This document shows, piece by piece, positions 11,522 to 63,420 of a stretch of DNA of 64,000 nt. Every line of letters begins with the position of its first letter. The first letter of the stretch is position 1. This DNA is from Malacoraja senta (lineage: Eukaryota): assembly GCA_038087875.1 (NCBI GenBank), contig CM075994.1, positions 9,052,001-9,116,000 of the forward strand, given 5' to 3'. Made by a program: the position numbers and the translations under genes. The notes below the pieces were generated by a model. It saw only the letters and a program-made list of their open reading frames with translations, searched no databases and had not been told where the DNA came from.

Positions 11522-12890
11522 GTAAGTTTCCGTTATATTAACTTTGTCTTTAATGTTCTAAAAAACATTCTGAACACCGGCCACCACACGCCTCAACAAC
11601 AAAGCTTTGTCAGTTCAGATTTAGGCACATAAATTCATTATATATGTAGGAACCAGGGGGCACAGTTTAAGAATAAGGGGTAAGCCATTTGGGACTGAGA
11701 TGAGGAAAACCCGTAGAGTTGTGAATCTGTGGAATTCTCTGCCCGAGAAGGCAGTTGAGGCCAATTCTCTGGATGCTTTCAAGAGAGAGTTAGATAGAGC
11801 TCTTAAAGATAGCGGAGTCAAGGGATATTGGAAGAAGGCAGGAACGGGGTACTGATTGTGGATGGACAGCCATGATCACAGTGAATGGCCGTGCTGGCTC
11901 GAAGGACCGAATGTCTATTGTCTATTGCCCACACCGGCCAACACGTCCCAGCGACATTAGTCCCACCTGCGTGCGCTTGGTCCATATCACTCGAAACCTG
12001 TCCTATCCATGTACCTGTCCTATCCATGTACCTGCTTCTTACACGATGGGATAGTCCCAGCCTCCACGACCTCCTCTGGCAGCTTGCTCCATACACCGAC
12101 CATTTTTGCCATCGAAGAACAATCAAATTCCCTCTTAATTCACATGCCCGCTACGCTCACTCCGACTCCTCCAATTATCAGGGGTAATTTACAGCTGTTC
12201 ATTACCTATCAGGACGCACGTCTCTGGGATGAGAGAGGAAGCAGTAACGCCCAGGGGAAACGCAGGCAATAACATGGAGAACGTGCAAACTCCACACCGG
12301 TAATCAGCATTGAGACCAGGCTACTGGCCCTCAGAGGCAGTAGCTACTTCGGCTATTCCCTCAAGAAACCAAGGTGGAGATAAAGGGAACAGCAAATGCA
12401 GGGTTACAAACAAAAAGACGCAAAATGCTGGAGTAACAGCGGGCCCGGCAGTATGTCTGGAGAACATGGATAGGTCACATTGCGGGATGCTGAAGAAGGG
12501 TGCCGACCTGAAACGTCGCCTATCCATGGGGGTGGTAGATTGCAACCTTCACGTGGTCCGCCCTGTTTCGACGAATGCAATCAACCCGGCGTGCACAATC
12601 AAATAAGATCAAATAGAACAAGTTGTCCTACAACTTTAGGCAATGCACGACATATGCAAGAAGAAGAAGCCTATCCATGTTCTCCAGAGATGCTGCCTGA
12701 CCCGTTGACTTACTCCAGCACTTTGTATACTATGCCAGATTCCCACATCTGTTGTTCCTTTTCAGGCAACTGAAGTCTACGAATTGGTTTACGTTTTGAA
12801 TGGTAGTGGGAACATTTCTGTGTATAAGAATGGAAGGAAACAGAAATGAACTGGGAAGTAATTTGTGAACTTGATGTTTTATTCCTACAG

Positions 12891-13063
12891 AACAGAGCCT
12901 TCTAGAAAGCCCTGCGTGGAGATTACGTTGGCAGCTGCTGATAATGGGAGTGAAACTTGCAACGTTCATTGTGATCAACGTTATAATAGTCTTCATCATC
13001 CGCTCATGGGAGTCTTGTGGATTTGCCAGTCGTAGAAAAGAAGCCAAACAGGCTGGTCAAACG
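12891..13063 (+). CDS. Gene 1 stalk/TM exon with intramembrane lysine (activating type)
   Basis: Acceptor ttttattcctacAG; in phase with V-B; QSLLESPAWRLRWQLLIMGVKLATFIVINVIIVFIIRSWESCGFASRRKEAKQAGQT; donor ACG/GTAAGA. No ATG, so absent from the ORF track. Confidence 0.85.
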
Positions 13064-13179
13064 GTAAGAGGATTGCCAGCTGCATGTGTGGGTTGCATTA
13101 GCAACTGAGGTCACTGGACAACGGTGCATTTTATTGTCACCTGCGAGGTACTACCACAGTGAAAATATTTTCCTTATAA

Positions 13180-13410
13180 ACTTACCTTAACTTAAATTAA
13201 CTTAACCAAATGAAACTATACTTAAACATAACTTAACGTAACTTAACGAAATTAAACAAAAAAAATTAACCAAACTTTACTTAACTGAATAATAAAACTT
13301 AACTAATCTTAATCAAACCAAACCATTCTAAACCAAACAAAATAAAACTGACCTAAACTAAACTTAACTTAATTTAACTTAACTTAACGTAACTTAACTA
13401 ATCTAAAATA
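13180..13410. repeat. Degenerate (TTAAC/CTAAA)n AT-rich simple repeat in gene 1 intron
   Basis: Directly visible pentamer array. Confidence 0.85.
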
Positions 13411-22119: not shown

Positions 22120-24070
22120 ACAACATAGCAAAGATAAGCGGGAAGCCTGAGGATTAGGTAACGTTTAAAGAGCAACAGAATATAACTAAAAAGGCAATAC
22201 GGGGAGAAAAGATGAGGTACGAAGGTAAGCTAGTCAAGAATATAAAGGAGGTTAGTAAAAACTTCTTTATGTGAAGAGGAAAACATTACTTAGCAGCAAA
22301 TTTGGACCCCTGAAGAATGAAAAGGGTGAATTTATTATGGGGAACAAGGAAATGGCAGATGAATTGAACAGGTACTTTGGATCTGTCTTCACTAAGGAGG
22401 ACATAAACAATCTTCCTGATATTGTAGCGGCCAGGCGATCTGGGGCGACGGGAGAACTGAAGGAAATCTACATCAGGCAGGAAATGGTGTTGGGCAGACT
22501 GATGGGACTGAAGGCTGATGGTCTGCATCCCAGGGTACTTAAGGAATTGGTTCTAGAAATCATGGACGCATTGGTGATAAATTTCCAATGTTCTATAGAT
22601 TCAGGATCAGTTCCTGTGGATTGGAAGGTAGCTAATGTTATCCCACGTTTTAAGAAAGGCGGGAGAGAGAAAACAGGGAATTATAGACCAGTTAACCTGA
22701 CATCGGTGGTGGGGAAGATGCTGGAATCAATTATAAAAGATGAGATAGCCGCACATTTGGATAGCAGTAACAGGATCGGTCCGAGTCAGCATGGATTTAC
22801 GAAGGGAAAATCACGCTTGACTAATCTTCTGGATTTTTTTGACGATGTACCTCGGAAAATCGACAATGGAGAACCAGTGGATGTAGTGTACCTGGACTTT
22901 CAGAAAGCATTTGATAAGGTCCCACATAGGAGATTAGTGGGTAAAATTAGGGCACATGGTATTGGGGGTAGAGTGCTGATATCGATGGAAAATTGGTTGG
23001 CAGACAGCAAACAAAGAGTAGGGATTAACTGGTCCCTTTCAGAATGGCAGGCAGAGACTAGTGGGCTATCCCAAGGCTCGGTGCTGGGACCGCTGCTATT
23101 TAAAATATATATTAATGATTTAGATGAAGGGATTACAAGTAACATTAGCAAATTTTCAGATGCCACAAAGCTGCGTTACAGTGTGAACTGTAAGGAGTAT
23201 GCTATGAGAATGCAGGGTGACTTGGACAGGTTGAGTGAGTGGGCAGATGCATGGCAGGTGCAGTTTGATGTGGATAAATGTGAAGTTATCCACTTTGGTA
23301 ACAACAACAGGAAGGAAGATTATTATCTAAAGGGTGTCAAGTTGGGAAAAGAGGAAGTTCAACAGGATCTGCGGGTCCTTGTTCATCAGTCAATGAAAGT
23401 AAGCCTGCAGGTACAGCAGGCAGTGAAAAAAGCGAATGGCATGTTGGCCTTCATAACAAGAGGATTGGGTATAGGAGCAAAGAGTCCTTCTGCAGTTGTA
23501 TAGGGCCCTAGTGAGACCACACCTGGAGTTTTGTATGCAGTTTTGGTCTCCAAATTTGAGAAAGGATATTCTTGCTACTGAGGGAGTACAGAGTAGGTTC
23601 ACAGGGCTAATTTCCGGGATGGCGGGACTATCATATGATGAGAAAATTGAGCGACTGAGCTTGAAAACTCTGGAATTTAGAAGGATTCCCATCTTATTGA
23701 AATATATAAGATTATTAAGGTTTTGGGCACGCTAGAGGCAGGAAACATGTTCCCGATGTTGGGGGAGTCCAGAGCCAGGGTCCACAGTGTAAGAATAAGG
23801 GGTAAGCCATTTAGAACGGAGATGAGAAAACACTTTTTCACGCAGAGAATTGTGAGTCTGTGGAATTCTCTGCCTCAGAGGGTGTGTAGGGCGGTTCTCT
23901 GGAAACGTTCAAGTGAGAGCTAGATAGGGATCTTGAAGATAACGGAGTCAGTGGATATGGGGAGAAGGCAGGAATGGGGTGCTGATTATGGATGATCAGC
24001 CATGAACACATTGAATGGCGGTGCTGACTCGAAGGGCCGAATGGCCTACTCCTGCACCTGTTGTCTATTG
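22120..24070 (+). mobile_element. CR1/HER1-like LINE, 5'-truncated, degenerate
   Basis: ORF 22271-23503 (RT motifs) and downstream fragments; (CTATTGT) tail. Confidence 0.93.
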
Positions 24071-25716
24071 TCTCTTGGGACAAAGTAGAGATGGTTGAAA
24101 ACTTCAAATTCCAAGAGGTCAAACTCACCAATTACTTCTCCTGGACCACCCATATTGAAGCAACAATCAAGAAAGCACTACACCGCCTCTACTTCCTTAG
24201 AAGGCTTAGGAAATTTGACATGTCTCCTATAACTCCCACCAACTTCTACAGATGCACCACAGAAAGCATTTTACCATGATGCATCACAATTTGGTTTGGG
24301 AATAGCTGCATCCAAGACCGCAAGAATTTGCAGCGAATTGTGGAGGCAGCCCAGACCATCACACAAACCAACCTCCCTTCCATTTACTCCATTTATGCCT
24401 CACGCTGCTTCGGCCAGGTCAGCAGCATAATCAAGGGCCCGTCAAACCCTGGCCACTCCCCCTTCTCCCCACACCCATCGAGCAAAAGGTGTAGGTGTGA
24501 AAACGCACACCTCCAGATTCAGGGACAGTGTCTTCCCAGCTGTTATCAGGCACCTGAATCATGCTACCACAACTAGAGAGCAGTCCTGAACTACTATCTA
24601 CCTCAATGGTGACCCTTGGACTATCCTTTATCGTACTTTACTGGCTTTACCTTGCACTAAACGTTATTCCCATATCATGTATATGTACACTGTAAACGGC
24701 TCAATTGTAATCACCTATTTGTCTTTCTGCTGATTGGTTAGCACGCAACAAAAGCTCTTCACTGTACTTCGGATAGACACAAAATCTGGAGTGACTCGAT
24801 AGACAATAGAAATAGACAATAGGTGCGGGAGGCCATTCGGCCCTTCAAGCTAGCACCACCATTCGCTGTGATCATGGCTGATCATCCACAATCAGTACCC
24901 CGTTCCTGCCTTCTCCCCACAACCCCTGACTCCGCTATCTTTCGGGGCTCTGTCTAACTCAGCGGGACGGGCAGCATCTCTGGAGTTAAGGAATTGGTGA
25001 CGTTTCGGGTCGAGACCCTTCTTCAGACCTCTGTACTTCGGCACATGTGACACTACACTAAACTGAGTGCAGATCCAGATTATCCGTTCGGGCAATGAAC
25101 GAAATCCCGAATTCTGAATTTGAGTTTTCAATAAATATCTTACTTATATATCTGCCACTAAGTAAATTGTTTGCACGCAACAAGTTGAAAGGATTCGTCG
25201 TCTTTGAAGCAGCTAACGCAGCTAAAGCGGTCTAGCTTGTTCCGCCTGAAGGGATTTCACAATGCTGCAGCCAAGACGTTAACATCGTCCCCCCCCCCCC
25301 CAATATTGCTGGAGGAACTGAACCGGTCAGGCAGCATCTCTGGAGGTCAAAACAATGAACCGCAGGTGGTGGTTAATGAATGCACAAGAGGACATGAAGT
25401 GATGGAGTAACAGGTCAGGCAGCGCCTCTGGAGGTGGGAACAAGGAACTGCAATGCTGGTTTTCGCACAATAACATAAAGTGCTGGAGTAACTCAGCAGG
25501 TCAGGCAGCGGCAGCGCCTCTGGAGCTGGGAACAAGGATCTGCAGAGGCGTGTGGATGCATATCAGAAAGTGCTGGAGTAGATCAGCGGGTCAGGAAACA
25601 TCTCTGGAGAACATGGATAGGCGACGGTTTGGGTCTGGATCTCTCTTCAGACGGATTTCCCATGTCTTTCGCAGATGCTGCCTGACCTGTTTTTGTGCGT
25701 TTGCTTCCGCCTACAG

Positions 25717-25763
25717 GTAGCCGTTCAAAGATGCGGTGGAGTATGGTCGCTTGGTCCTTTCTG
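25717..25763 (+). CDS. Gene 2 leader exon, 3' end in N gap
   Basis: Acceptor cttccgcctacAG, ATG at 25731, MRWSMVAWSFL; paralog of 2714-2767. Confidence 0.75.
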
Positions 25764-26401
25764 NNNNNNNNNNNNNNNNNNNNNNNNNNNNNNNNNNNNN
25801 NNNNNNNNNNNNNNNNNNNNNNNNNNNNNNNNNNNNNNNNNNNNNNNNNNNNNNNNNNNNNNNNNNNNNNNNNNNNNNNNNNNNNNNNNNNNNNNNNNNN
25901 NNNNNNNNNNNNNNNNNNNNNNNNNNNNNNNNNNNNNNNNNNNNNNNNNNNNNNNNNNNNNNNNNNNNNNNNNNNNNNNNNNNNNNNNNNNNNNNNNNNN
26001 NNNNNNNNNNNNNNNNNNNNNNNNNNNNNNNNNNNNNNNNNNNNNNNNNNNNNNNNNNNNNNNNNNNNNNNNNNNNNNNNNNNNNNNNNNNNNNNNNNNN
26101 NNNNNNNNNNNNNNCACACATACGCACGCACACACGTGCACACACACGTACACACACACGTACACTCACANNNNNNNNNNNNNNNNNNNNNNNNNNNNNN
26201 NNNNNNNNNNNNNNNNNNNNNNNNNNNNNNNNNNNNNNNNNNNNNNNNNNNNNNNNNNNNNNNNNNNNNNNNNNNNNNNNNNNNNNNNNNNNNNNNNNNN
26301 NNNNNNNNNNNNNNNNNNNNNNNNNNNNNNNNNNNNNNNNNNNNNNNNNNNNNNNNNNNNNNNNGGATGGGCCGAAACTATAAGATGATTTCTGGTTTCA
26401 G

Positions 26402-26725
26402 GTGCTGTTGGATCCGATGAATCGATCATACAATCACCGTCGCAGATCACAGTTACTGAAGGCGGGACTGTGCGGATGAATTGTACATTTGTTAACAAGA
26501 CAATTGGGGCCATTAGTTGGTACAAAGACGTGGAATCTCGTACCGTTACCAACACGAGCGGCGACTATTATGGTCGCGTTCTGACAAGCAGTTCACTGGG
26601 AATTCTAAAACAATCCATCGAAATCACTGACCTCAAAATGAACGAGACAGGAAAGTATTACTGCCGAGTGACAGTTTTCACAAGGGAAATATATAATGGC
26701 CACGGCACAGAAGTCACAGTCACAC
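26402..26725 (+). CDS. Gene 2 Ig V-domain exon (V-C), intact; alternative ends at 26761 and 26797
   Basis: GAVGSDESIIQSPSQITVTEGGTVRMNCTFVNKTIGAISWYKD..ETGKYYCRVTVFTREIYNGHGTEVTVT; phase 1-1; three C/GTAAGT donors 36 nt apart. Confidence 0.92.
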
Positions 26726-27159
26726 GTAAGTTTGCGTACAGCACAGATGTCGCAGTCACACGTAAGTTTGCGTACAGCACAGATGTCACGGTCACACGTA
26801 AGTTTGCGTTATCTTAACTTTATCTTTACTGTTCTTAAAAAACATTCTTAATCCGACTCCACTTGCCTTTGTGTGTCGGGTGGAACTGCAGATAGACACA
26901 AAAAACTGGAGTAACTCAGCGGGACAGGCAGCATCTCTGTAGAGAAGGAATGGGTGACGTTTCGGGTCGCGACCCTTCTTGAGGCTGGTTAGGGATAAGG
27001 GAAACGAGAGATATAGGCGATGATGTAGAGATATAATAAATGAAAGATATGCAAAAAAAAGTAACAATGATAAAGGAAACAGCCCATTGTTAGCTGTTTG
27101 TTGGGTGAAACCGAGAAGCTGGTGCGACTTGGGTGGGGGAGGGGTAGAGAGAGAGGGAA

Positions 27160-28670: not shown

Positions 28671-28808
28671 AGGCTGCTGCGGGCGGCGAGGGATCGTCTT
28701 TTCAAATAAATAATATCTTTCTGCTTGTATTTCCACTCTTGGGCGTTGTGATGCTCGGGATGGTACTGATTCTGATCATTTACCTGCGACGCCGCGGTCG
28801 ATCTCCAG
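28671..28808 (+). CDS. Gene 2 stalk/TM exon, uncharged TM
   Basis: Acceptor ttttatttctcaacAG; 138 nt, phase 1-1; AAAGGEGSSFQINNIFLLVFPLLGVVMLGMVLILIIYLRRRGRSP; donor G/GTAATA. Confidence 0.9.
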
Positions 28809-31962: not shown

Positions 31963-34215
31963 GTATGTAGTCAATTATACTTTAAATGTTTCCTCTGACT
32001 TGATCAGTGGTTATTTGCCATTTTTGTTTCTTTGTGAATTAAATTGACATTAGACAATAGACAATAGGTGCAGGAGTAGGCCATTCGGCATTTCAAGCAG
32101 CACCGCCTTTCAATTTGTTCATGGCTGATCATCCCCAATCAGTGCCCCGTTCATGCCTCCTCTCCATATCCCCTGACGCCGCTATCTTTAAGAGCCTATC
32201 TATCTCTCTCTTGAAAGCATCCAGAGAATCGGCCTCCACCGCCCTCAGAGGCAGAGAATTCCACAGACTCACAACTCTCTGTGTGAATAAGTGTTTCCTC
32301 CCCTCCGTTCTAAATGGCTTATCCCTTATTCTTCAACTGTGACGCCTGGTTCTGGACTCCCCCAACATCGGACGTTTCCTGCCCTCTACCATGTACAAAC
32401 CCTTAACAATCCTTTATGTTCAATAAGATAACCTCTCATCCTTCTAAACTACAGAGTGTACAAGCCCAGCCGCTCCATTTCTCAGCATATGACAGTCCCG
32501 CCATCCCGGGAATTAACCTCGTGAAACCTACACCCGAACTCCCTCAATAGCCATCCAGACCGGTCCTTGTTCATCAGTGACTAAAAGTTAGCATGCACAT
32601 ACAGCAGGCAGTGAAGAAAGCGAATGGCATGTTTGCCTTCATAATAAGAGGAGTTGAGTATAGGAGCAAAGAGGTCCTTCTGCAGTTGTACTGGGCCCTA
32701 GTGAGATCACACCTGGAGTATTGTGTCCAGTTTTGGTCCCCTAATTTGAGGAAGGACATTCTTGCTATTGAGGGAGTGCAGCGTAGGTTTACAAGGTTAA
32801 TTCCCGGGATGGCGAGGCTGTCATATGCTGAGAGAATGGAGCTACTGGGCTTGTATACTCTGGAGTTTAGAAGGATGAGAGGGTATCTTATTGAACATAA
32901 AGGATTATTAAGGTTTGTACATGGTAGAGGCAGGAAACATGTTCCCGATGTTGGGGGAACACATCTCCATTAACCCCCCCCCCAAAAAAAACCTTCTCAC
33001 AGTACAGCTATGCCCCCTAGTGTTCGACATTTCAACCCAATTAATGTTGAATTATTGTTATTCACGGTGACAAAACTAGAATGAGAAGTTCCCTTCAGGC
33101 AATTGCTTTGGGATAAATATTACATATTCATTTAAAGAGATTTTCAAGCGAATTGCAAGAAAATGGATCATTTATCGCAAGTATTTGTTCAGCCACGGTA
33201 TAATCTGCTCAGCATTCTATGGTGTATCTATCATTGGAATTAACCGGTAACGGTGGATATATTAATCTCACAACTTAATGGCGAACCTAAAACAGTTAAT
33301 TTGCTTTCATCCCGCGGCATGCTTCGCAGCGGAGTTGTTATAAATGTTAGGTTGCTGAACCGCTTCATGAAAGAGGCTCATTGACCAGAAACTAACACAA
33401 TGCTCGATACCTCAAATCAATAGACAATAGACAATAGGTGCAGGAGTAGGCCATTCGAGCCAGCACCGCCATTCAATGTGATCATGGCTGATCATCCACA
33501 ATCAGTAACCCGTTCCTGCCTTCTCCCCATATCCCCTGAATCCGTTGTGAACTTTTGAAGAGGGATAAGTTACCGGACAAAATCCAATCGTATGTAGGTT
33601 TCAAATGGAGTCATGGAGTGATACAGTTTGGAAACACGTCCTTCGGCCCAACCTGCCCACTCCGGCCATCAATATCCCAGCTACACTAGTCCCAACTGCC
33701 TGCGCTTGGTCCATATCCCTCCAAACCTGTCCTATCCATGTTCCTGTCTAACTCTTTCTTAAATGTTGTGGCAGTCCCATCCTCAACTACCTCCTCTGGC
33801 AACTCGTTCCATACACCCACCGCGGTTTGTGTGGAAAAGGTTACTCCTTAGATTCCTATTCAATCTTTTCCCATTCACCTTGAACAACCGTCCTCTGGTC
33901 TTCGATTCCTCTACTCTGGGGAAGAGACTCTGTGCATCTACCCGATCTATTCCTCTCGTGATTTTGTACACCTCTATAAGATCACCCCTCATCTTCCTGC
34001 GCTCCAAGGAATAGAGACCCAGCCTACTCAACCTCTCCCTGCAGCTCACACCCTCTACTCCTGGCAAAATCCTCGTAAATCTTGCAACAAATAATCCAGA
34101 AACTAACACAATGCTTCAAATCACACAGGGTTTATGGAATTAGGAAGAGGTGCTGGACAATTTCCAAACTTGTTTAGGTTTCAAATGTTGTAACAAATAC
34201 CCTGTTACATTCCAG

Positions 34216-34515
34216 GAAAATGACACATCGGAAAATATAATCTATGCTGACCTGAATATCAAAAAGTCGAACAGAAATCACCGTTCGGGTCACGATGCCA
34301 GAGGGAATGGGGCTAGGGTCAAAGACCCCGGCGGGGCCGGACCTCTGTCAGCAGCAGGTGGAAGGGAAGACCCGGTCGTGTACTCCGCCTTGAAACCCCG
34401 CGCTCCGATTAACACTCCAGCGTCGAGCAAGCAGAAGAAGCATCACAGAAGACAGGAACAGCAGGTTGTGTACGCAACGGTAAATGCTCAGCGTCCACCA
34501 GTTCTCTATCACTGA
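34216..34515 (+). CDS. Gene 2 terminal exon encoding three ITIMs (IIYADL, VVYSAL, VVYATV)
   Basis: Acceptor gttacattccAG, phase 0, 100 codons to TGA; motifs fit (S/I/V/L)xYxx(I/V/L). Confidence 0.88.
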   Translation, partial: ENDTSENIIYADLNIKKSNRNHRSGHDARGNGARVKDPGGAGPLSAAGGREDPVVYSALKPRAPINTPASSKQKKHHRRQEQQVVYATVNAQRPPVLYH

Positions 34516-38919: not shown

Positions 38920-40380
38920 GAAACATAGAAACATAGAAAATAGGTGCAGGATAAGGCCATTCGGCCCTTCGAGCCTGCACCGCCATTCAATATGATCATG
39001 GCTGATCATCCAACTAAGTATCCTGTACCGGCCTTCTCTCCATACCCCCTGATCCCTTTAGCCACAAGGGCCACATCTAACTCCCTCTTAAATATAGCCA
39101 ATTAACTGGCCTCAACTACCTTCTGTGGCTGAGAATTCCACAGATTCACCACTCTCTGTGTGAAAAATGATTTTCTCATCTTGGTCCTAAAAGACTTCCC
39201 CCTTATCCTTAAGCTGTGACCCATGGTTCTGGACTTCCCCAACATCGGGAACAATCTTCCTGCATCTAGCCTGTCCAACCCCTTAAGAATCTTGTAAGTT
39301 TCTATAAGGTCCCCCCTCAATCGTCCAAATTCTAGCGAGTACAAGCCGAGTCTATCCAGTCGTTCTTCATATGAAAGTCCTGCCATCCGAGGAATCATTG
39401 TGGTGAACCTTCTCTGTCTTCCCTCTATGGCAAGAATGTCTTTCCTCAGATTTGGTGACCAAAACTGTACGCAATACTCCAGGTGTGGCCTCATCAAGAC
39501 CCTGTACAACTGCAGTAGAACCTCCCTGCACTTATACTCAAATCCTTTTGCTATGAATGCTAACATACCATTCGCTTTCTTCACTGCCTGCTGCAACTGC
39601 ATGCCTACCATGACACCCAGATCTCGTTGCATCTCCCCTTTTCCTAATCGGCCACCATTCAGATAATAGTCTACTTTCTGTTTTTGCCACCAAAGTGGAT
39701 AACCTCACATTTATCCACATTATACTGCATCTGCCATGCATTTGCCCACTCACCCAACCTATCCAAGTGACCTTGCAGCCTCCTAGCATCCTCCTCACAG
39801 CGAAAACTGCCCCCCAGCTTCGTGTCATCCGCAAACTTGGAGATGTTGCATTCAATTCCCTCATCCAGATCTTTAATACCCCACTAGTCACTGCCTGCCA
39901 TTCTGAAAAGGACCCGTTTACTCCTACACTTTGCTTCCTGTCTGCCAGCCAGTTCTCTATCCACATCAATACTGAACCCCCAATACCGTGTGCTTTAAGT
40001 TTACATACTAATCTCTTATGCGGGACCTTGTCGAAAGCCTTCTGAAAGTCCAGGTATAACATATCCACTGGTTCTCCCTTATCCACTCTACTAGTTACAT
40101 CCTCGAAAAATTCTACAAGATTCGTCAGACATGATTTACCTTTCATAAATCCATGCTGACTTTGTCCAATGATTTCACCACTTTCCAAATGTGCAGCTAT
40201 CCCATCTTTAATAACTGACTCTAGCATTTTCCCAACTACCGATGTTAGACTAACTGGTCTGTAATTTCCCGTTTTCTCTCTCCCTCCCGTTTTAAAAAGT
40301 GGGGTTTCATTAGCTACCCTCCAATGCTCAGGAACTATTCCAAAATCTAAAGAGTTCTGAAAAATTATCACTAATGCATC
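38920..40380 (-). mobile_element. CR1/HER1-like LINE fragment
   Basis: ORFs 39538-40371 and 39102-39632 with RT motifs; duplicate of part of 43560-45870. Confidence 0.93.
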
Positions 40381-43559: not shown

Positions 43560-45870
43560 TTAGAAACATAGAAACATAGAAACATAGAAAATAGGTGCAG
43601 GAGTAGGCCATTCGGCCCTTCGAGCCTGCACCGCCATTCAATATGATCATGGCTGATCATCCAATTAAGTATCCTGTACCTGCCTTCTCTCCATACCCCC
43701 TGATCCCTTTAGCCACAAGGGCCACATCTAACTCCCTCTTAACTATAGCCAATGAACTGGCCTCAACTACTTTATGTGGCTGAGAATTCCACAGATTCAC
43801 CAATCTCTGTGTGAAAAATGATTTTCTCATCTCGGTCCTAAAAGACTTCCCCCTTATCCTTAAACAGTGACCCCCTTGTTCAGGACTTCCCCAACATCGG
43901 GAACAATCTTCCTGCATCTAGCCTGTCCAACCCCTTAAGAATCTGATAAGTTTCTATAAGATCCCCCCTCTATCTTCTAAATTCTAGCGAGTACAAGCCG
44001 AGTCTATCCAGTCTTTCTTCATGTGAAAGTCCTGACATCCCAGGAATCAGTCTGGTGAACTTTACTGTACTCCCTCTATGGCAAGAATGTATTTCCTCAG
44101 ATTTGGTGACCAAAACTGTACGCAATACTCCAGGTGTGGCCTCATCAAGACCCTGTACAACTGCAGTAGAACCTCCCTGCACTTATACTCAAATCCTTTT
44201 GCTATGAATGCTAACATACCATTCGCTTTCTTCACTGCCTGCTGCAATTGCATGCCTACTTTCAATGACTGATGTACCATGACACCCAGATGTCGTTGCA
44301 TGTCCCCTTTTCCTAATCGGCCACCATTCAGATAATAGTCTACTTTCCTGTTTTTGCCACCAAAGTGGATAACCTCACATTTATCCACAATATACTGCAT
44401 CTGCCATGCATTTGCCCACTCACCCAACCTATCCAAGTGACCTTGCAGCCTCCTAGCATCCTCCTCACAGCTAACACTGCCCCCCCAGCTTCGTGTCATC
44501 CGCAAACGTGGAGATGTTGCATTCAATTCCCTCATCCAGATCATTAATATATATTGTAAATAGCTGGGGTCCCAGCACTGAGCCTTGCGGTACCCCACTA
44601 GTCACTGCCTGCCATTCTGAAAAGGACCCGTTTACTCCTACTCTTTGCTTCCTGTTTGCCAGCCAGTTCTCTATCCACATCAATACTGAACCCCTAATAC
44701 CCTGTGCTTTAAGTTTGCATACTAATCTCTTATGTGGGACCTTGTCGAAAGCCTTCTGAAAGTCCAGATATAACACATCCAGTGGGTCTCCCTTATCTCT
44801 AGCATTTTCCCCACTACCGATGTTAGACTAACAGGCCTGTAATTCCCCGTTTTCTCTCTCCCTCCCTTTTTAAAAAGTGAGGTTACATTAGCTACCCTCC
44901 AATCCTCAGGAACTACTCCAGAATCTAAAGAGTTCTGAAAAATTATCACTAATGCATCCACTATTTCTGGGGCTACTTCCTTAAGTACTCTGGGATGCAG
45001 CCTGTCTGGCCCTGGGGATTTATCGGCCTTTAATCCATTCAATTTACCTAACACCACATCACGGCTAACCTGGGTTTCACTCAGTTCCTCCATCTCATTT
45101 GACCCCCAGACCCCTGCTATTTCCGGCAGATTATTTATGTCTTCATAAGTGAAGACAGAACCAAAGTAGTTATTCAATTGGTCTGTTGTATCCTTGTTCC
45201 CCATGATCAATTCACCAGTTTCTCACTGCAAGGGACCTACATTTGTTTTAACTAATCTTTTTCTCGTCACATATCTATAAAAACTTTTGCGGTCAGTTTT
45301 TATGTTCCCTGCCAGGTTTTTTTCATAATCTATTTTCACTTTCCTAATTAAGCCCTTTGTCCTCCTCTGCTGGACTCAGAATTTCCTCTGGTAGGCTGCT
45401 TTTTCGGGCTAATTTGTATGCTTCATCTTTTGTTTTAATACTATCCCTGATTTCCCTTGTTATCCACGGATACGCTACCTTCCCTGATTTATTCTTTTGC
45501 CAAACTGGGATGAACAATTGTTGTAGTTCATCCATGCAGTCTTTAAATGCCTTCCATTGCATATCCACCGTCAACCATTTAAGAATCACTTGCCAGTCTA
45601 TCTTGGCCAATTCACGTCTCATTCCCTCAAATTTACCCTTCTTTAAGTTCAGAACCCTTGTTTCTGAATTAACAATGTCACTCTCCATCCTAATGAAGAA
45701 CTCAACCATATTATGGTCACTCTTGCCCAAGGGGCCACGCACAACAAGACTGCTAACCAACCCTTCCTCATTACTCAATACCCAGTCTAGAATAGCCTGT
45801 TCTCTCGTTGGTCCCTCTACATGTTGGTTTAGAAAACTATCCCGCATATATTCCAAGAGTGTATCTTGTT
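43560..45870 (-). mobile_element. CR1/HER1-like LINE, degenerate with internal deletion
   Basis: ORFs 45344-45874 (APE), 44722-45210, 44471-44776, 44062-44598. Confidence 0.93.
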
Positions 45871-47482
45871 GCATTGTTTACGTCGAAGTCCGTGTAATTT
45901 ACAATGATATATACCTGTTCCAGACTTGCATGCATCACTACTTCAGTACTGTCACGATTAGGAATCACACCATCTCGCAACCGAATGCAGCGCCAGAGAC
46001 CCGGGTTCGATCCCGACTACGGGTGCTGCCTCTACGGAGTTTGCACCTTCTCCCCATGACCTGCGTGGCTTTTTTTCGGAGAACTTCCGTTTCCTCCCAC
46101 ACTCCAAAGACGTGCAGGTTTGTAAGTTAAATTGGCTTGGTAAATGTAAAAATAAAAAATAAATTAAGCAAATTGTCCCTAGTGGGTGTAGGATGGTGTT
46201 AGTGTGCGGGGATCGCTGGTTGGCGCGGACCCGATGGGCCGAAGGGCCTTGTTTCCGCGCTGTATCTCTAAACTAAATCTTAGTTTTACCTTCAACGCTG
46301 ACTAAGTAGTAAATTAATCACGTCTTGTGTTTAGTTTAGTTTAGTTTAGTTTAGAAATACAGCGCGGAAACAGGCCCTTTGGCCCACCGGGTCTACGCCG
46401 ACCAGCGATCCCCGCACACATTAACACTATCCTACACATAGAAAAACATAGCAACGTAGAAAAATAGGGGCAGGAGTAGGTCATTCGGCCCTTCGAGCCA
46501 GCACCGACATTCAATATGATCACACACACCAGGGACAATTTACACATACAACCAGCCAATTAACCGACATACCTGTACATCTTTGGAGTGTGGGAGGAAA
46601 CAGAAGATCTCGGAGAAAACTCACGCGGTGACGGGGAGAACGTTGGAGTCAATTGGCGTAAAGGCGGAAGGAAATCAGACCCGATATTAAATAATCGGTG
46701 TGATATCATTCAAAATCTTTATTGAAGTATCGAATGTTTTAACCACAGGTAACACTGAATTGTTTATGCATAACAACTATACATGTCATAATATCTCTCC
46801 CTCCTTCAAAATCCCTCCCACAAATTGCATAGGTAATATTTCCATCGATATTTACACGAACGGTCATTTGTTAGTAAATTTCATTGAATGCAATGGCGCA
46901 CGTGTCTTAACTAAAAAAAAATATTCCAGAAATAACTGTTAATGACTGCTCCAAAGCTGTTGGAATTAATTAGAAACATAGAAACACAGAATATAGGTGC
47001 AGGAGTAGGCCATTCGGCCCTTTATACTGCCTTTATGCTGCATTTATAACCGACATTTTACTGCACCTGCCATGCATCTGCCCACTCACCCAACCTATCC
47101 AAGTCACCCTGCATCCTCATAGCATCCTTCTCGCAGGTTACATCTTTGTGTCATCCGCAAACTTGGAAATGTTACATTTAATTGGCTGGGTGCATGGAAC
47201 AAGCTACCGGGTTCGATCCTGACTACGGGTGCTGTCTGCACGGAGCATTTACGTTCTCCCCGTGACCCGCGTGGGTTTTCCCCGGGTGCTCCGGTTTCCT
47301 CCCACACCCCAAAGACGTTCGGGTTCGTGGTTTAATTTGGCTTCGGCAAAAATGGTAAATTGTCCCTAATGTGTGCAGGATTGTGCTAGTAGCGCTGGTC
47401 GGGGCCGAAGGGCCTGTTTCCGCGTTACTGAATTAAACTAAGAGAGCGCCGCCGCCTTGTACAGTCCTCTCATTCCCAATGT

Positions 47483-47857
47483 TCAGTGATGGAGAAGTGG
47501 TGGACGCTGAGCATTCACGGTTGCGTACACCACCTGTTGTTCCTTTCTTCTGGGATTCTTCTTCTGCTTGCTCGATGCTGGAGTGTCCATCGGAGCGGGA
47601 TGTCTCAAGGCGCAGTATACGACCGGGTCTTCCCTTCTACCTGCCGCCGATGCTGGAGTGTCTGTTGGAGCGGGATGTCGCAAGGCGGAGTATACGACCG
47701 GGTCTTCCCTTCCACCTGCCGCCGACAGAGGTCCAGCCTCGCCGGGGTCTTTGACCCTAGCCCCATTCTCTCTGGCACCGTGATCCGAACGGTGATTCCT
47801 GTTCGACTTTTTCATATTCAGGTCAGCATAGATTATATTTTTCGATGTGTCATTTTC
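47483..47857 (-). CDS. Gene 3 terminal exon encoding four ITIMs (IIYADL, VVYSAL, VVYCAL, VVYATV)
   Basis: Acceptor tttacattccAG; 125 codons; 75 nt longer than the gene 2 exon because of an internal duplication. Confidence 0.88.
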   Translation of the reverse strand, partial: ENDTSKNIIYADLNMKKSNRNHRSDHGARENGARVKDPGEAGPLSAAGGREDPVVYSALRHPAPTDTPASAAGRREDPVVYCALRHPAPMDTPASSKQKKNPRRKEQQVVYATVNAQRPPLLHH

Positions 47858-47939
47858 CTGGAATGTAAACAGAGTATTTGTTACAAGACTTAAACCCCAA
47901 ACGTGATGTGCAATTGTCCAGCACCTCGTCCCTCTTCTA

Positions 47940-60849: not shown

Positions 60850-63420
60850 CGTGGCTGACAGGAGATGGCATCAAACAGGAAATTAGAAATGCGTGCAACA
60901 AAGGCAAAACAGTTATAATGGGTGACTTCAATCTACATATAGATTGGGTGAATCAAATTGGCAGGGGTGCTGAGGAAGAGGATTTCTTGGAATGTATGAG
61001 GGATAGTTATCTAAACCAACATGTAGAGGAACCAACGAGAGAGCAGGCTATTCTAGACTCGGTATTGAGTAATGAGGAAGGGTTAGTTAGCAGTCTTGTT
61101 GTGCGTGCCCCCTTGGGCAAGAGTGACCATAATATGGTTGAGTTCTTCATTAGGATGGAGAGTGACATTGTTAATTCAGAAACAACGGTTCTGAACTTAA
61201 AGAAAGGTAACTTTGAGGGTATGAGACGTGAATTGGCCAAGATTGACTGGCAATTAGTTCTAAAAGGTTGACGGTGGATATGCAATGGAAGGCATTTAAA
61301 GACTGCATGGATGAACTACAAAAATTGTTCATCCCAGTTTGGCAAAAGAATAAATCAGGGAAGGTAGTGCATCCGTGGATAACAAGGGAAATCAGGGATA
61401 GTATCAAAGCAAAAGATGATGCGTACAAATTAGCCAGAAAAAGCAGCATACCAGAGGACTGGGAGAAATTCAGCGACCAGTAGAGGAGGACAAAGGGCTT
61501 AATTAGGAAAGGGAAAATAGATGATGAAAGGAAACTGGCAGGGAACATAAAAACGGACTGCAAAAGTTTTTATAGATATGTGAAGAGAAAGAGATTAGTT
61601 AAAACAAATGTAGGTCCCTTGCACTCAGAAAAAGGTGAATTGATCATGGGGAACAAGGATATGGCGGACCAATTGAATAACTACTTTGGTTCCGTCTTCA
61701 CTAAGGAAGACATAAATAATCTGCCGGAAATAGCAGGGGGCCGCGGGTCAAAGGAGATGGAGGAACTGAGTGAAATCCAGGTTAGTCGGGAAGTGGTGTT
61801 GAGTAAATTGAATGGATTAAAGGCCGATAAATCACCAGGGCCAGATAGGCTGCATCCCAAAGTACTTAAGGAAGTAGCTCCAGAAATAGTGGATGCATTA
61901 GTGATAATTTTTCAAAACTCTTTAGATTCTGGAGTAGTTCCTGAGGATTGGAGGGTAGCAAACGTAACCCCACTTTTTAAGAAGGGAGGGAGAGAGAAAA
62001 CGGGGAATTACAGACCAGTTAGTCTAACATCGGTAGTGGGGAAACTACTAGAGTCAGTTATTAAAGATGGGATAGCAGCACATTTGGAAAGTGGTGAAAT
62101 CATTGGACAAAGTCAGCATGGATTTACGAAAGGTAAATCGTGTCTGACGCATCTTATATAATTTTTCGAGGATGTAACTAGTAGAGTGGATAGGGGAGAA
62201 CCAGTGGATGTGTTGTATCTGGACTTTCAGAAGGCTTTCGACAAGGTACCACAAAAGAGATTAGGATACAAACTTAAATCACACGGTATTGGGAGTTCAG
62301 TATTGATGTGGATAGAGAACTGGCTGGCAAACAGGAAGAAAAGAGTAGGAGTAAACGGATCCTTTTCACAATGGCAGGCAGTGACTAGTGGGGTACCGCA
62401 AGGCTCAGTGCTGGGACCCCAGCTATTTACAATTTATATTAATGATCTGGACGAGGGAATTGAAAGCAACATCTCCAAGTTTGCGGATGACACTAAGCTG
62501 GGGGGCAGTGTTAGCTGTGAGGAGGATGCTAGGAGACTGCAAGGTGACTTGGATAGGCTGGGTGAGTGGGCAGATGTTTGGCAGATGCAGTATAATGTGG
62601 ATAAATGTGAGGTTATCCACTTTGGTGGCAAAAACGGGAAGGCAGACTATTATCTAAATGGTGGCCGATTAGGAAATGGGGAGATGCAGCGAGACCTGGG
62701 TGTCATGGTACACCACTCATTGAAAGTAGGCATGCAGGTGGTATGTTGGCCTTCATAGCAAGCGAATGGTATGTTGGCCTTCAGAGCAAGAGGATTTGAG
62801 TATAGGAGCAGGGAGGTTCCACTGCAGTTGTACAGGGTCTTGGTGAGACCACACCTGGAGTATTGCGTACAGTTTTGATCTCCAAATCTGAGGAAGGACA
62901 TTATAGCCATAGAGGGAGTGCAAAGAAGGTTCACCAGACTGATTCCTGGGATGTCAGGACTTTCATATGAAGAAAGACTGGATAGACTTGGCTTATACTC
63001 GCTAGAATTTAGGAGATTGAGAGGGGATCTTATAGAAGCGTACACAATTCTTATGGGGTTGGACAGGCTAGATGCAGGAAGATTGTTCCCGGTGTTGGGG
63101 AAGTCCAGGACAAGGGGTCACAGCTTAAGGATAAGGGGGAAATCCTTTAAGACCGAGATGAGGAAAAACGTTTTCACACAGAGAGTGGTGAATCTCTGGA
63201 ACTCTCTGCCACAGAGGGTAGTTGAGGCCAGTTCATTGGCTATATTTAAGAGGGAGTTAGATGTGGCCCTTGTGGCTAAAGGGATCAGGGGGTATGGAGA
63301 GAAGGCAGGTACGGGATACTGAGTTGGATGATCAGCCATGATCATATTGAATGGCGGTGCAGGCTCGAAGGGCCGAATGGCCTACTCCTGCACCTATTTT
63401 CTACGTATCTATGTATCTAT
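60850..63420 (+). mobile_element. CR1/HER1-like LINE (~2.6 kb, APE part and RT), degenerate
   Basis: ORFs 60780-61271, 61580-62161, 62186-62758, 62918-63322; (ATCTATGT) tail; very similar to 4335-6297. Confidence 0.95.

What the first reader, a model, noticed from the sequence alone, without database searches (positions are those of the whole stretch)
12891..13063. Hidden lysine-bearing TM exon unrelated to the inhibitory TM exons
Absent from the ORF track but bounded by strong splice sites and in frame with V-B. It has no visible similarity to the 138-nt TM exons of genes 2 and 3, although the V exons are highly similar. Inference: activating and inhibitory forms arose by placing a homologous V exon on two unrelated signalling back-ends (exon shuffling), not by mutation of one TM.
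Basis: partly seen in the sequence, partly recalled or inferred. Interest (0 to 1): 0.7.

Follow-up and report, generated by a model that had tools for sequence, protein, structure and literature searches.

The report
Skate NKp30-like activating membrane exon
This is a real exon, conserved in skates, rays and sawfish, that gives one skate immune-receptor gene a lysine-bearing membrane anchor (the "activating" form), while neighbouring genes carry the same outer domain on an unrelated "inhibitory" anchor and tail; this is another case of the familiar paired-receptor design, not a new kind of gene.

Summary
Positions 12891-13063 (+) follow a good acceptor and join the V-B exon (11153-11521) in frame, phase 1 to phase 1. 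They encode one helix with a lysine in its outer third and a short tyrosine-free tail.

The same exon sits behind the same VJ-type V domain in predicted proteins of another skate, three stingray/manta genera and a sawfish. Lys21 and Asn29 never vary. Between skate and sawfish DNA, apart from repeat-like pieces, only the V exon and this exon align.

No test found similarity to the 138-nt inhibitory TM exons (z about 1-2; hhalign probability under 0.3%). Same-type comparisons over the same evolutionary distance give z of 6-23.

Two corrections:
- **3' boundary.** In the skate and sawfish relatives this is the last coding exon, with the stop inside it. The GTAAGA at 13064 may therefore be read through to the TGA at 13106-13108.
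- **Age of the split.** Both back ends predate the skate/ray split. The high V similarity comes from repeated within-lineage exchange of a promoter-leader-V cassette. The V tree rejects grouping by back end (AU p about 1e-49).

The pattern resembles Siglec-11/16 and CEACAM1/3. It is a new member of a known kind. Expression and adaptor pairing are untested.

The parts
2728..2767 (+). Start of the leader exon of gene 1 (ATG, MQWSLVAWSFLLL), running into a masked N stretch at 2768. It is the only leader upstream of V-B.
   Evidence: tblastn with the Rhinoraja leader finds only 2728-2766 and 25731-25763 in the window; sequence read. The promoter and leader region 1806-2760 is 83% identical to 24800-25763 of gene 2.
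3487..3706 (+). V-A, an upstream V exon copy whose 5' part is masked. The donor position reads AT, not GT, so it is probably skipped or dead.
   Evidence: In alignment A4, ACAC is followed by ATACGT at 3707.
11153..11521 (+). V-B exon: a V-set Ig domain with a J-like GHGTxVTVT motif. Phase 1 at both ends; donor ACAC|GTAAGT.
   Evidence: Pfam V-set E=3.7e-12; 89-92% nt identity to the V exons of genes 2 and 3.
10923..11574 (+). Extent of homology between gene 1 and genes 2/3 around the V exon: about 230 bp of 5' flank, the exon, and about 50 bp of 3' flank. Homology ends in the intron.
   Evidence: blastn matches 10923-11532 to 56788-56193 (89%), 11122-11533 to 26371-26773 (87%) and 11531-11574 to 26807-26851.
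12891..13063 (+). The finding itself: a K-type exon encoding a juxtamembrane LRWQ motif, a TM helix with Lys (exon residue 21) and Asn (residue 29), and the start of a basic, tyrosine-free tail.
   Evidence: orthologous exon in Rhinoraja and Pristis; conservation island 12856-13021 against sawfish.
13064..13108 (+). Possible read-through extension of the coding sequence (14 codons, then TGA at 13106-13108), used if GTAAGA at 13064 is not spliced.
   Evidence: Rhinoraja reads GTC AGA TGA at the same place and its NCBI model ends there. Pristis reads GTG ATC TAA.
13291..13346 (+). Two AATAAA motifs (13291-13296 and 13341-13346), 183 and 233 nt after the TGA. They are candidate poly(A) signals inside an A/T-rich simple repeat.
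   Evidence: Consensus match only; AATAAA is common in this window.
28671..28808 (+). Inhibitory-type TM exon of gene 2 (138 nt, phase 1-1), used as comparator.
53687..53824 (-). Inhibitory-type TM exon of gene 3 (138 nt, phase 1-1), used as comparator.
34178..34515 (+). Tail exon of gene 2 with three ITIM-like tyrosines (IIYADL, VVYSAL, VVYATV). The acceptor at 34176-34177 is inferred from phase.
   Evidence: homologous to the manta I-type tail, E=2e-14.

Best explanation
Positions 12891-13063 are the membrane-anchor exon, and most likely the last coding exon, of an activating member of a batoid NKp30 (NCR3)-like receptor family.

Gene 1 reads: leader (2728 onward), then V-B (11153-11521), then this exon. 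V-A, which has lost its donor, is skipped.

The product would be a single VJ-type V domain on a very short stalk, one TM helix and a short basic tail with no tyrosine. The helix has one conserved face that carries an invariant lysine in the outer third and an invariant asparagine two turns below. By analogy with other immune receptors that have a basic TM residue, the lysine would pair with an aspartate in the membrane helix of an ITAM adaptor (DAP12, FcR-gamma or CD3-zeta type), which would signal for it.

Genes 2 and 3 in the same cluster carry the same promoter-leader-V cassette on an unrelated 138-nt TM exon plus an ITIM-type tail. Together the genes form an activating/inhibitory pair. Both back ends are old and conserved across skates and stingrays/mantas (the K type also in a sawfish). 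The V cassette is kept alike within each lineage by recurrent exchange or gene conversion, with the break in the intron just after the V exon.

Shown: the exon, its frame, its conservation, the lack of similarity between the two TM exons, the homology break, and the discordance between the V tree and the back ends. Inferred: expression, use or non-use of the 13064 donor, and adaptor pairing.
For: - **Frame and splice sites:**
- **TM helix:** hydropathy and the AlphaFold helix.
- **Same exon in relatives:** NCBI models from Rhinoraja longicauda, Hemitrygon akajei, Hypanus sabinus, Mobula birostris, M. hypostoma and Pristis pectinata carry it behind the same V domain. Nine columns are invariant, including K21 and N29.
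- **Conserved face:** conservation along the helix peaks at 100 degrees per residue, which marks one conserved face.
- **Genomic copies:** the exon sits at the matching place in Rhinoraja and Pristis DNA with a conserved acceptor.
- **Conservation island:** skate against sawfish aligns the V exon and this exon; the few other matches are short stretches in repeat-rich DNA that I did not examine.
- **Where the module occurs:** a profile of the back end searched against 1.84 billion proteins returns only batoid NCR3-like proteins.
- **K against I TM exons:** z 1.0-1.9, against 6-23 for same-type controls; hhalign probability below 0.3%.
- **I-type tail:** homologous between skate and manta, E=2e-14.
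- **Shared 5' cassette and break point:**
- **V tree:** V domains cluster by lineage. Holding the I-type V domains as one clade costs 120.7 lnL, AU p about 1e-49.
- **V identities:** V-B is 89-92% identical to the I-type V exons of the same genome but 83% to the K-type V exon of Rhinoraja.
Against: - No RNA data were available, so expression and the splice junctions are not shown.
- pN/pS between this exon and the Rhinoraja copy is about 0.9 on 57 codons. No constraint is visible at short range.
- Gene 1 has an 8-kb first intron full of LINE fragments and a dead V-A exon.
- The in-exon stop seen in Rhinoraja is lost here.
- The relatives are automatic gene predictions, not cloned cDNAs.
- No adaptor gene was examined.
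- The name NCR3-like comes from automatic annotation. Solved NKp30 was not among the 60 best sequence matches of V-B in the PDB, which were mostly antibody-type V domains, with some pIgR and NCAM2 entries.
Confidence: 0.8

Rival explanations
1. The K-type and I-type TM exons descend from one ancestral TM exon. The activating form arose from an inhibitory gene by point mutation and tail truncation, as in KIR, and the similarity has since been erased.
For: TM segments are short and drift quickly. Even the true skate/manta I-type TM pair fails BLASTP with composition correction. One K-against-I3 local alignment (ESPxxR plus TM) reached p=0.014 in shuffles before correction for multiple tests. Both exons start in phase 1 directly after the V exon.
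Against: All K-against-I comparisons give z of 1.0-1.9, while same-type skate/ray comparisons give 6-23 with the same method. The profile-profile probability is below 0.3%. There is no DNA similarity. The exon builds differ: 173+ nt and terminal, against 138 nt and internal phase 1-1. Neither gene type holds a relic of the other's exons.
Confidence: 0.1
2. Gene 1 is a decaying copy. The exon is a conserved-looking relic that is no longer expressed or no longer makes a working receptor.
For: V-A has lost its donor. About 7 kb of LINE and other repeat sequence lies between V-A and V-B. The stop codon position of the Rhinoraja copy is lost. pN/pS is about 0.9 against Rhinoraja. Neighbouring gene 3 carries frameshifts, so pseudogenes do occur in this cluster. 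The gene did not appear as an annotated product in the protein search.
Against: The V-B and K exon reading frames are intact, with canonical Cys, Trp, YYC and J motifs, good splice sites, and all nine invariant back-end positions kept. The Rhinoraja gene has the same long first intron and the same repeat insertions and is still modelled as an intact gene.
Confidence: 0.12
3. The K exon and the I-type exons are alternative 3' ends of one larger transcription unit, not parts of separate genes.
For: NCBI lists a K-type protein (P0006, isoform X2) and an I-type protein (P0012, isoform X1) under one Mobula hypostoma gene name. Only the longer product is on record, for a 29-kb gene. In the window the K exon lies upstream of gene 2 on the same strand.
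Against: The two Mobula isoforms differ inside the V domain, so they use different V exons. In the window gene 2 has its own promoter and leader, 83% identical to those of gene 1. There are no I-type exon relics between 13108 and 24800 and no K relic in genes 2/3. No I-type exons lie downstream of the K exon in the Pristis locus.
Confidence: 0.05

Closest known systems
NKp30 (NCR3) and the shark NCR3 gene family (Flajnik et al. 2012; Kinlein et al. 2021; neither paper could be opened here, so the comparison rests on my own knowledge and on database names)
   Same: A single non-rearranging VJ-type V domain encoded by one exon, a TM helix with a basic residue, and a short tail with no signalling motif. 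The closest database relatives are named 'natural cytotoxicity triggering receptor 3-like'. Earlier notes of this scan place a skate NKp30 gene about 98 kb upstream.
   Different: The basic residue is lysine, not arginine. The TM profile finds no shark, bony-fish or tetrapod NKp30. Orthology to mammalian NCR3, MHC linkage and B7H6 binding were not tested. This subfamily also has ITIM-bearing partners.
Siglec-11/Siglec-16 and Siglec-5/Siglec-14 paired receptors (PMC5701461, PMC4042635)
   Same: An inhibitory ITIM receptor and an activating partner lie side by side, and their ligand-binding exon is kept nearly identical by repeated gene conversion in each lineage.
   Different: The family (sialic-acid lectins) and the host group (primates) differ. 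Here the exchanged unit includes the promoter and leader, and the pattern spans skates and rays.
CEACAM1 and its ITAM-bearing relatives such as CEACAM3 (PMC2832619)
   Same: [quoted passage not shown]
   Different: The activating CEACAMs carry their own ITAM-like tail and do not use a charged TM residue and a separate adaptor.
KIR2DL/KIR2DS and Ly49 pairs (own knowledge)
   Same: Clustered activating and inhibitory receptors; the activating form has a TM lysine and a short tail.
   Different: In those families the activating TM exon is a clear homologue of the inhibitory one, changed by point mutation. Here the two TM exons share nothing detectable.

Membership tests
NKp30/NCR3-like VJ-type IgSF receptors | One V-set Ig domain with a J-like GxGTxVxV motif, encoded by a single non-rearranging exon | tested here: met
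   Pfam V-set E=3.7e-12. The motif GHGTGVTVT and its partial repeat lie within exon 11153-11521. The best PDB sequence matches are mostly antibody-type VJ domains.
NKp30/NCR3-like VJ-type IgSF receptors | TM helix with a basic residue and a short cytoplasmic tail without tyrosine motifs | tested here: met
   Lys at exon residue 21, no Tyr in the tail; helix. The residue is Lys, not the Arg of mammalian NKp30 (own knowledge).
NKp30/NCR3-like VJ-type IgSF receptors | Closest relatives belong to the family | tested here: inconclusive
   The hits are batoid proteins named NCR3-like, TIGIT-like, pIgR-like or uncharacterized by automatic annotation. No tree against bona fide NKp30 was built, and NKp30 was not in the top 60 PDB sequence hits.
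NKp30/NCR3-like VJ-type IgSF receptors | MHC linkage and binding of B7H6 | not testable with these tools
   Only the 64-kb window is readable, and no binding assay is possible.
Paired activating/inhibitory immune receptors | Clustered genes with near-identical ectodomains | tested here: met
   V exons are 89-92% identical within the window. The promoter and leader are 83% identical.
Paired activating/inhibitory immune receptors | One partner carries ITIM-type tyrosine motifs | tested here: met
   IIYADL, VVYSAL and VVYATV in the tail exon 34178-34515, with a copy on the minus strand. Homologous to ray tails.
Paired activating/inhibitory immune receptors | The other partner has a charged TM residue and signals through an ITAM adaptor | not testable with these tools
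   The charged TM residue is present and invariant. Adaptor association needs co-expression experiments.
Paired receptors kept alike by gene conversion (Siglec-11/16 type) | The ligand-binding exon clusters by species or lineage, and the signalling ends cluster by type | tested here: met
   V tree and AU test. V-B is 89-92% identical to I-type V exons of the same genome but 83% to the Rhinoraja K-type V exon. Back ends match only within a type.
Origin by exon shuffling from another gene family | The back end is found attached to a different ectodomain elsewhere | tested here: not met
   The K profile returns only batoid NCR3-like proteins. The I back end returns only the same family in rays (a word-limited search). 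The PDB gives nothing. Shark and chimaera genomes could not be searched at DNA level.

The most novel reading that the evidence does not exclude
The lysine/asparagine membrane module and the ITIM module may both have been kept since before skates and rays split, which is on the order of 200 million years by my own recollection. Over that time a promoter-leader-V cassette has been copied back and forth between them in every lineage. If so, this would be one of the oldest and most persistent cases of concerted evolution of a paired receptor, in the family around NKp30. The K module may also dock an adaptor through a Lys+Asn face that has no detectable counterpart outside batoids.
Probability: 0.45. 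Interest if true: 0.5.

Novelty: new member of a known kind. Interest (0 to 1): 0.35.

Why it matters
The result gives a correct gene model for an activating NKp30-like receptor in a skate. It shows that activating and inhibitory members of this family use two membrane and tail modules with no detectable relationship, and that both are conserved across batoids.

It also shows that the ligand-binding cassette moves between the two modules. Pathogen-driven models of paired receptors predict this behaviour, and it has been documented mainly in mammals. Comparative immunologists get a testable case in cartilaginous fish: which adaptor binds the Lys/Asn helix, and do the paired genes bind the same ligand?

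It is not a new kind of system, and public gene catalogues already predict the relatives.

Tried and rejected
1. **TCR-alpha-like motif.** The helix (K-L-A-x-F ... R-x-W) reminded me of the TCR-alpha TM motif. A profile search of all PDB chain sequences, including full TCR-CD3 complexes, gave only a chance hit at E=2.9, so I dropped the idea.
2. **Pfam.** Pfam on the K exon and the I exon gave only sub-threshold noise.
3. **Relics of the other type.** I looked for a relic K exon in genes 2/3 and relic I-type TM or tail exons downstream of gene 1. There were none by blastn or tblastn.
4. **A further coding exon.** I searched the window with the longer tails of stingray K-type proteins to find an exon after 13063. 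Nothing credible turned up.
5. **Selection test.** pN/pS against Rhinoraja is about 0.9 on 57 codons, which is uninformative.
6. **Key papers.** The two shark NKp30 papers (Flajnik 2012, Kinlein 2021) are not held. I could therefore not check whether charged-TM and ITIM subtypes were already described for sharks.
7. **Mobula gene.** The DNA of the gene that lists both a K and an I isoform could not be fetched.
8. **Earlier notes.** A look-up by sequence was blank.

Full report
**What is at the coordinates.** The stretch 12891-13063 on the + strand follows a polypyrimidine tract and AG (TTGATGTTTTATTCCTACAG|AA). It is followed by GTAAGA.
- The upstream V-B exon runs from 11153 (after TTTCAG) to 11521 (ACAC|GTAAGT) and ends with one spare base. 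The first two bases of the candidate exon complete that codon, so the two exons join in frame, phase 1 to phase 1 as usual for Ig-superfamily genes.
- The remaining 57 codons encode a short juxtamembrane piece, a hydrophobic stretch with a lysine at exon residue 21 and an asparagine at residue 29, and a basic tail without tyrosine.
- The best 19-residue hydropathy window scores 2.56.
- AlphaFold with nine relatives gives one continuous helix over residues 7-55, with pLDDT 87-94 in the core.
- The exon is missing from the ORF list only because its longest ATG-to-stop stretch is under 60 codons.

**The neighbours.** The window holds a cluster of single-V receptor genes.
- Gene 1 has a leader at 2728 that runs into a masked stretch. 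It then has a V-A copy whose donor position reads AT, then V-B, then the exon in question. No other leader lies upstream of V-B.
- Gene 2 (+ strand) has a leader at 25731, a V exon starting at 26402, a 138-nt TM exon at 28671-28808 and a tail exon ending at 34515. The tail carries three ITIM-like tyrosines.
- Gene 3 is an inverted copy of gene 2 on the minus strand, with its TM exon at 53687-53824.
- Earlier notes of this scan call the genome a skate and describe further NKp30-like genes on both sides of the window. I used them only as leads.

**Is the exon real?** Yes, on comparative grounds.
- A protein search with V-B found a 196-residue predicted protein of the skate Rhinoraja longicauda and a 258-residue 'natural cytotoxicity triggering receptor 3-like' protein of the stingray Hemitrygon akajei. 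Both carry the same membrane segment behind the same V domain.
- A second search added relatives from Hypanus, two Mobula species and the sawfish Pristis.
- In an alignment of nine back ends, nine columns are invariant, including the lysine and the asparagine.
- Conservation along the helix has its strongest period at 100 degrees per residue. That marks one conserved helix face: Q14, M18, K21/L22, F25, I28/N29, V33, I36.
- In the Rhinoraja and Pristis loci the exon sits at the matching place, about 2 to 4 kb after the V exon, with a conserved acceptor.
- Between the skate window and the sawfish locus, the V exon and this exon (12856-13021) align. The few other matches are short stretches in repeat-rich DNA that I did not examine.
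- Against the closer Rhinoraja copy, exon and introns are about equally similar (85% against about 80-83%) and pN/pS is about 0.9. Constraint shows only at long range.
- No transcript data could be consulted.

**Correction to the 3' boundary.**
- In Rhinoraja the bases after the shared ...CAAACG read GTC AGA TGA, and the NCBI model ends there (...GQTVR).
- In Pristis the coding sequence likewise ends inside the exon (GTG ATC TAA).
- In the window the same place reads GTA AGA GGA. The early stop is gone, a better donor consensus has appeared, and the frame stays open for 14 codons to TGA at 13106-13108.
- Two AATAAA motifs follow at 13291 and 13341.
- I think read-through to 13108 is more likely, roughly two to one, because the relatives are three-exon genes and the stop position drifts among them.
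- Splicing from 13063 to an unseen exon is not excluded. Stingray paralogues diverge right after the corresponding point.

**Are the two TM exons related?** No test found a relationship.
- DNA local alignment scores equal those of shuffled sequence. Protein scores lie at z of 1.0-1.9.
- With the same method and across the same skate/ray distance, K against K gives z of 17-23 and I against I gives z of 6-8.
- Profile-profile comparison of ten K back ends with six I-type TM segments gives a probability below 0.3%.
- The exons differ in length and phase.
- Neither gene type keeps a relic of the other's exons in the window.
- The I-type tail is clearly homologous between skate and manta (E=2e-14).
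- Two distinct back ends therefore existed before skates and rays diverged.

**Where do the modules occur?**
- A profile of the K back end, searched against 1.84 billion representative proteins, returned only four batoid NCR3-like proteins and one spurious repeat protein.
- The I back end, in a word-limited search, returned only ray members of the same family.
- Neither back end was found on a different ectodomain, so no donor family for a shuffling event can be named.
- The PDB gave nothing.

**How the V exon relates to the back ends.**
- Gene 1 and gene 2 share about 950 bp of promoter and leader at 83%, and the V exon with about 230 bp of 5' flank and about 50 bp of 3' flank at 87-89%. Beyond that, only dispersed repeats match.
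- Over the V exon alone, V-B (K type) is 89% and 92% identical to the V exons of genes 2 and 3 (I type). That is as close as genes 2 and 3 are to each other (92%). V-B is only 83% identical to the V exon of the Rhinoraja K-type gene.
- In a maximum-likelihood tree of 18 V domains, the skate, Mobula and stingray sequences group by lineage with K and I types mixed. The tree needs at least three to four changes of back-end label.
- Forcing the five I-type V domains into one clade costs 120.7 log-likelihood units (AU p about 1e-49).
- The V cassette and the back ends therefore have different histories. The cassette is exchanged between the two gene types again and again, with a break in the intron after the V exon.
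- The same pattern is described for Siglec-11/16 (PMC5701461) and for CEACAM1 and its ITAM-bearing relatives (PMC2832619).

**Mechanism.**
- Shown: a receptor gene with a V domain, a one-pass helix with an invariant lysine and asparagine on one conserved face, and a short tail with no signalling motif. It lies next to genes with the same V domain and ITIM-type tails.
- Inferred from established knowledge of immune receptors with a basic TM residue (NKp30 with CD3-zeta, see PMC12272517; KIR2DS with DAP12, own knowledge): the lysine pairs with an aspartate of a dimeric ITAM adaptor, which makes this the activating partner.
- Which adaptor, and whether it exists in this genome, was not tested.

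**Verdict.** The back ends are modular and unrelated as far as can be seen, and V exons do move between them. The event is old and recurrent, not a single origin visible in this cluster, and an erased common origin cannot be ruled out. This is a new member of a known kind, of moderate interest to comparative immunologists.

Noticed in passing
window 56193-56600 (-): Relative to V-B and gene 2, the V exon of gene 3 has a 1-nt deletion near its 5' end (GTGCTG-TGGATCC) and a 1-nt insertion just before the J motif (GGCCATCGG). From the normal acceptor the frame hits an early stop. Gene 3 is probably a pseudogene, or the assembly has errors there.
   Followed up: partly
window 26690-26810 (+); 56120-56250 (-); 11470-11527 (+): The J end plus splice donor is tandemly repeated in 36-nt units. 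Gene 2 has three ACAC|GTAAGT donors, with exon ends at 26725, 26761 and 26797. V-B has one extra copy whose donor has decayed (GTTCGT).
   Followed up: partly
window 47483-47866 (-) against 34178-34515 (+): The tail exon of gene 3 has an internal duplication that adds a fourth ITIM-like tyrosine (VVYSAL followed by VVYCAL), compared with three in gene 2.
   Followed up: no
window 3487-4111 and 11271-11916: V-A and V-B share the repeat element inserted just after the V exon, and genes 2/3 lack it there. The V-A/V-B duplication therefore happened after that insertion. The Rhinoraja gene has the same insertions after its single V exon.
   Followed up: partly
window 10505-10758: A perfect-looking tandem duplication of a 127-bp unit (98% identity) lies a few hundred bases upstream of V-B.
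   Followed up: no
window 13180-13410: An A/T-rich simple repeat built on AACTTAA-like units lies directly downstream of the K exon and is partly shared with the Rhinoraja locus. The candidate poly(A) signals lie inside it.
   Followed up: no
proteins P0006 and P0012 (Mobula hypostoma), P0003 (Hemitrygon akajei): NCBI lists a K-type and an I-type protein as isoforms X2 and X1 of one Mobula gene, although their V domains differ at several residues. A Hemitrygon K-type protein carries three tandem V domains on the same lysine anchor.
   Followed up: partly
window 5231-9933 (-), 22271-23503 (+), 39102-40371 (-), 44062-45874 (-), 60780-62758 (+): There are many fragments of reverse-transcriptase-bearing (LINE-like) elements, several with long open frames. 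They fill the introns and spacers of the receptor cluster.
   Followed up: no
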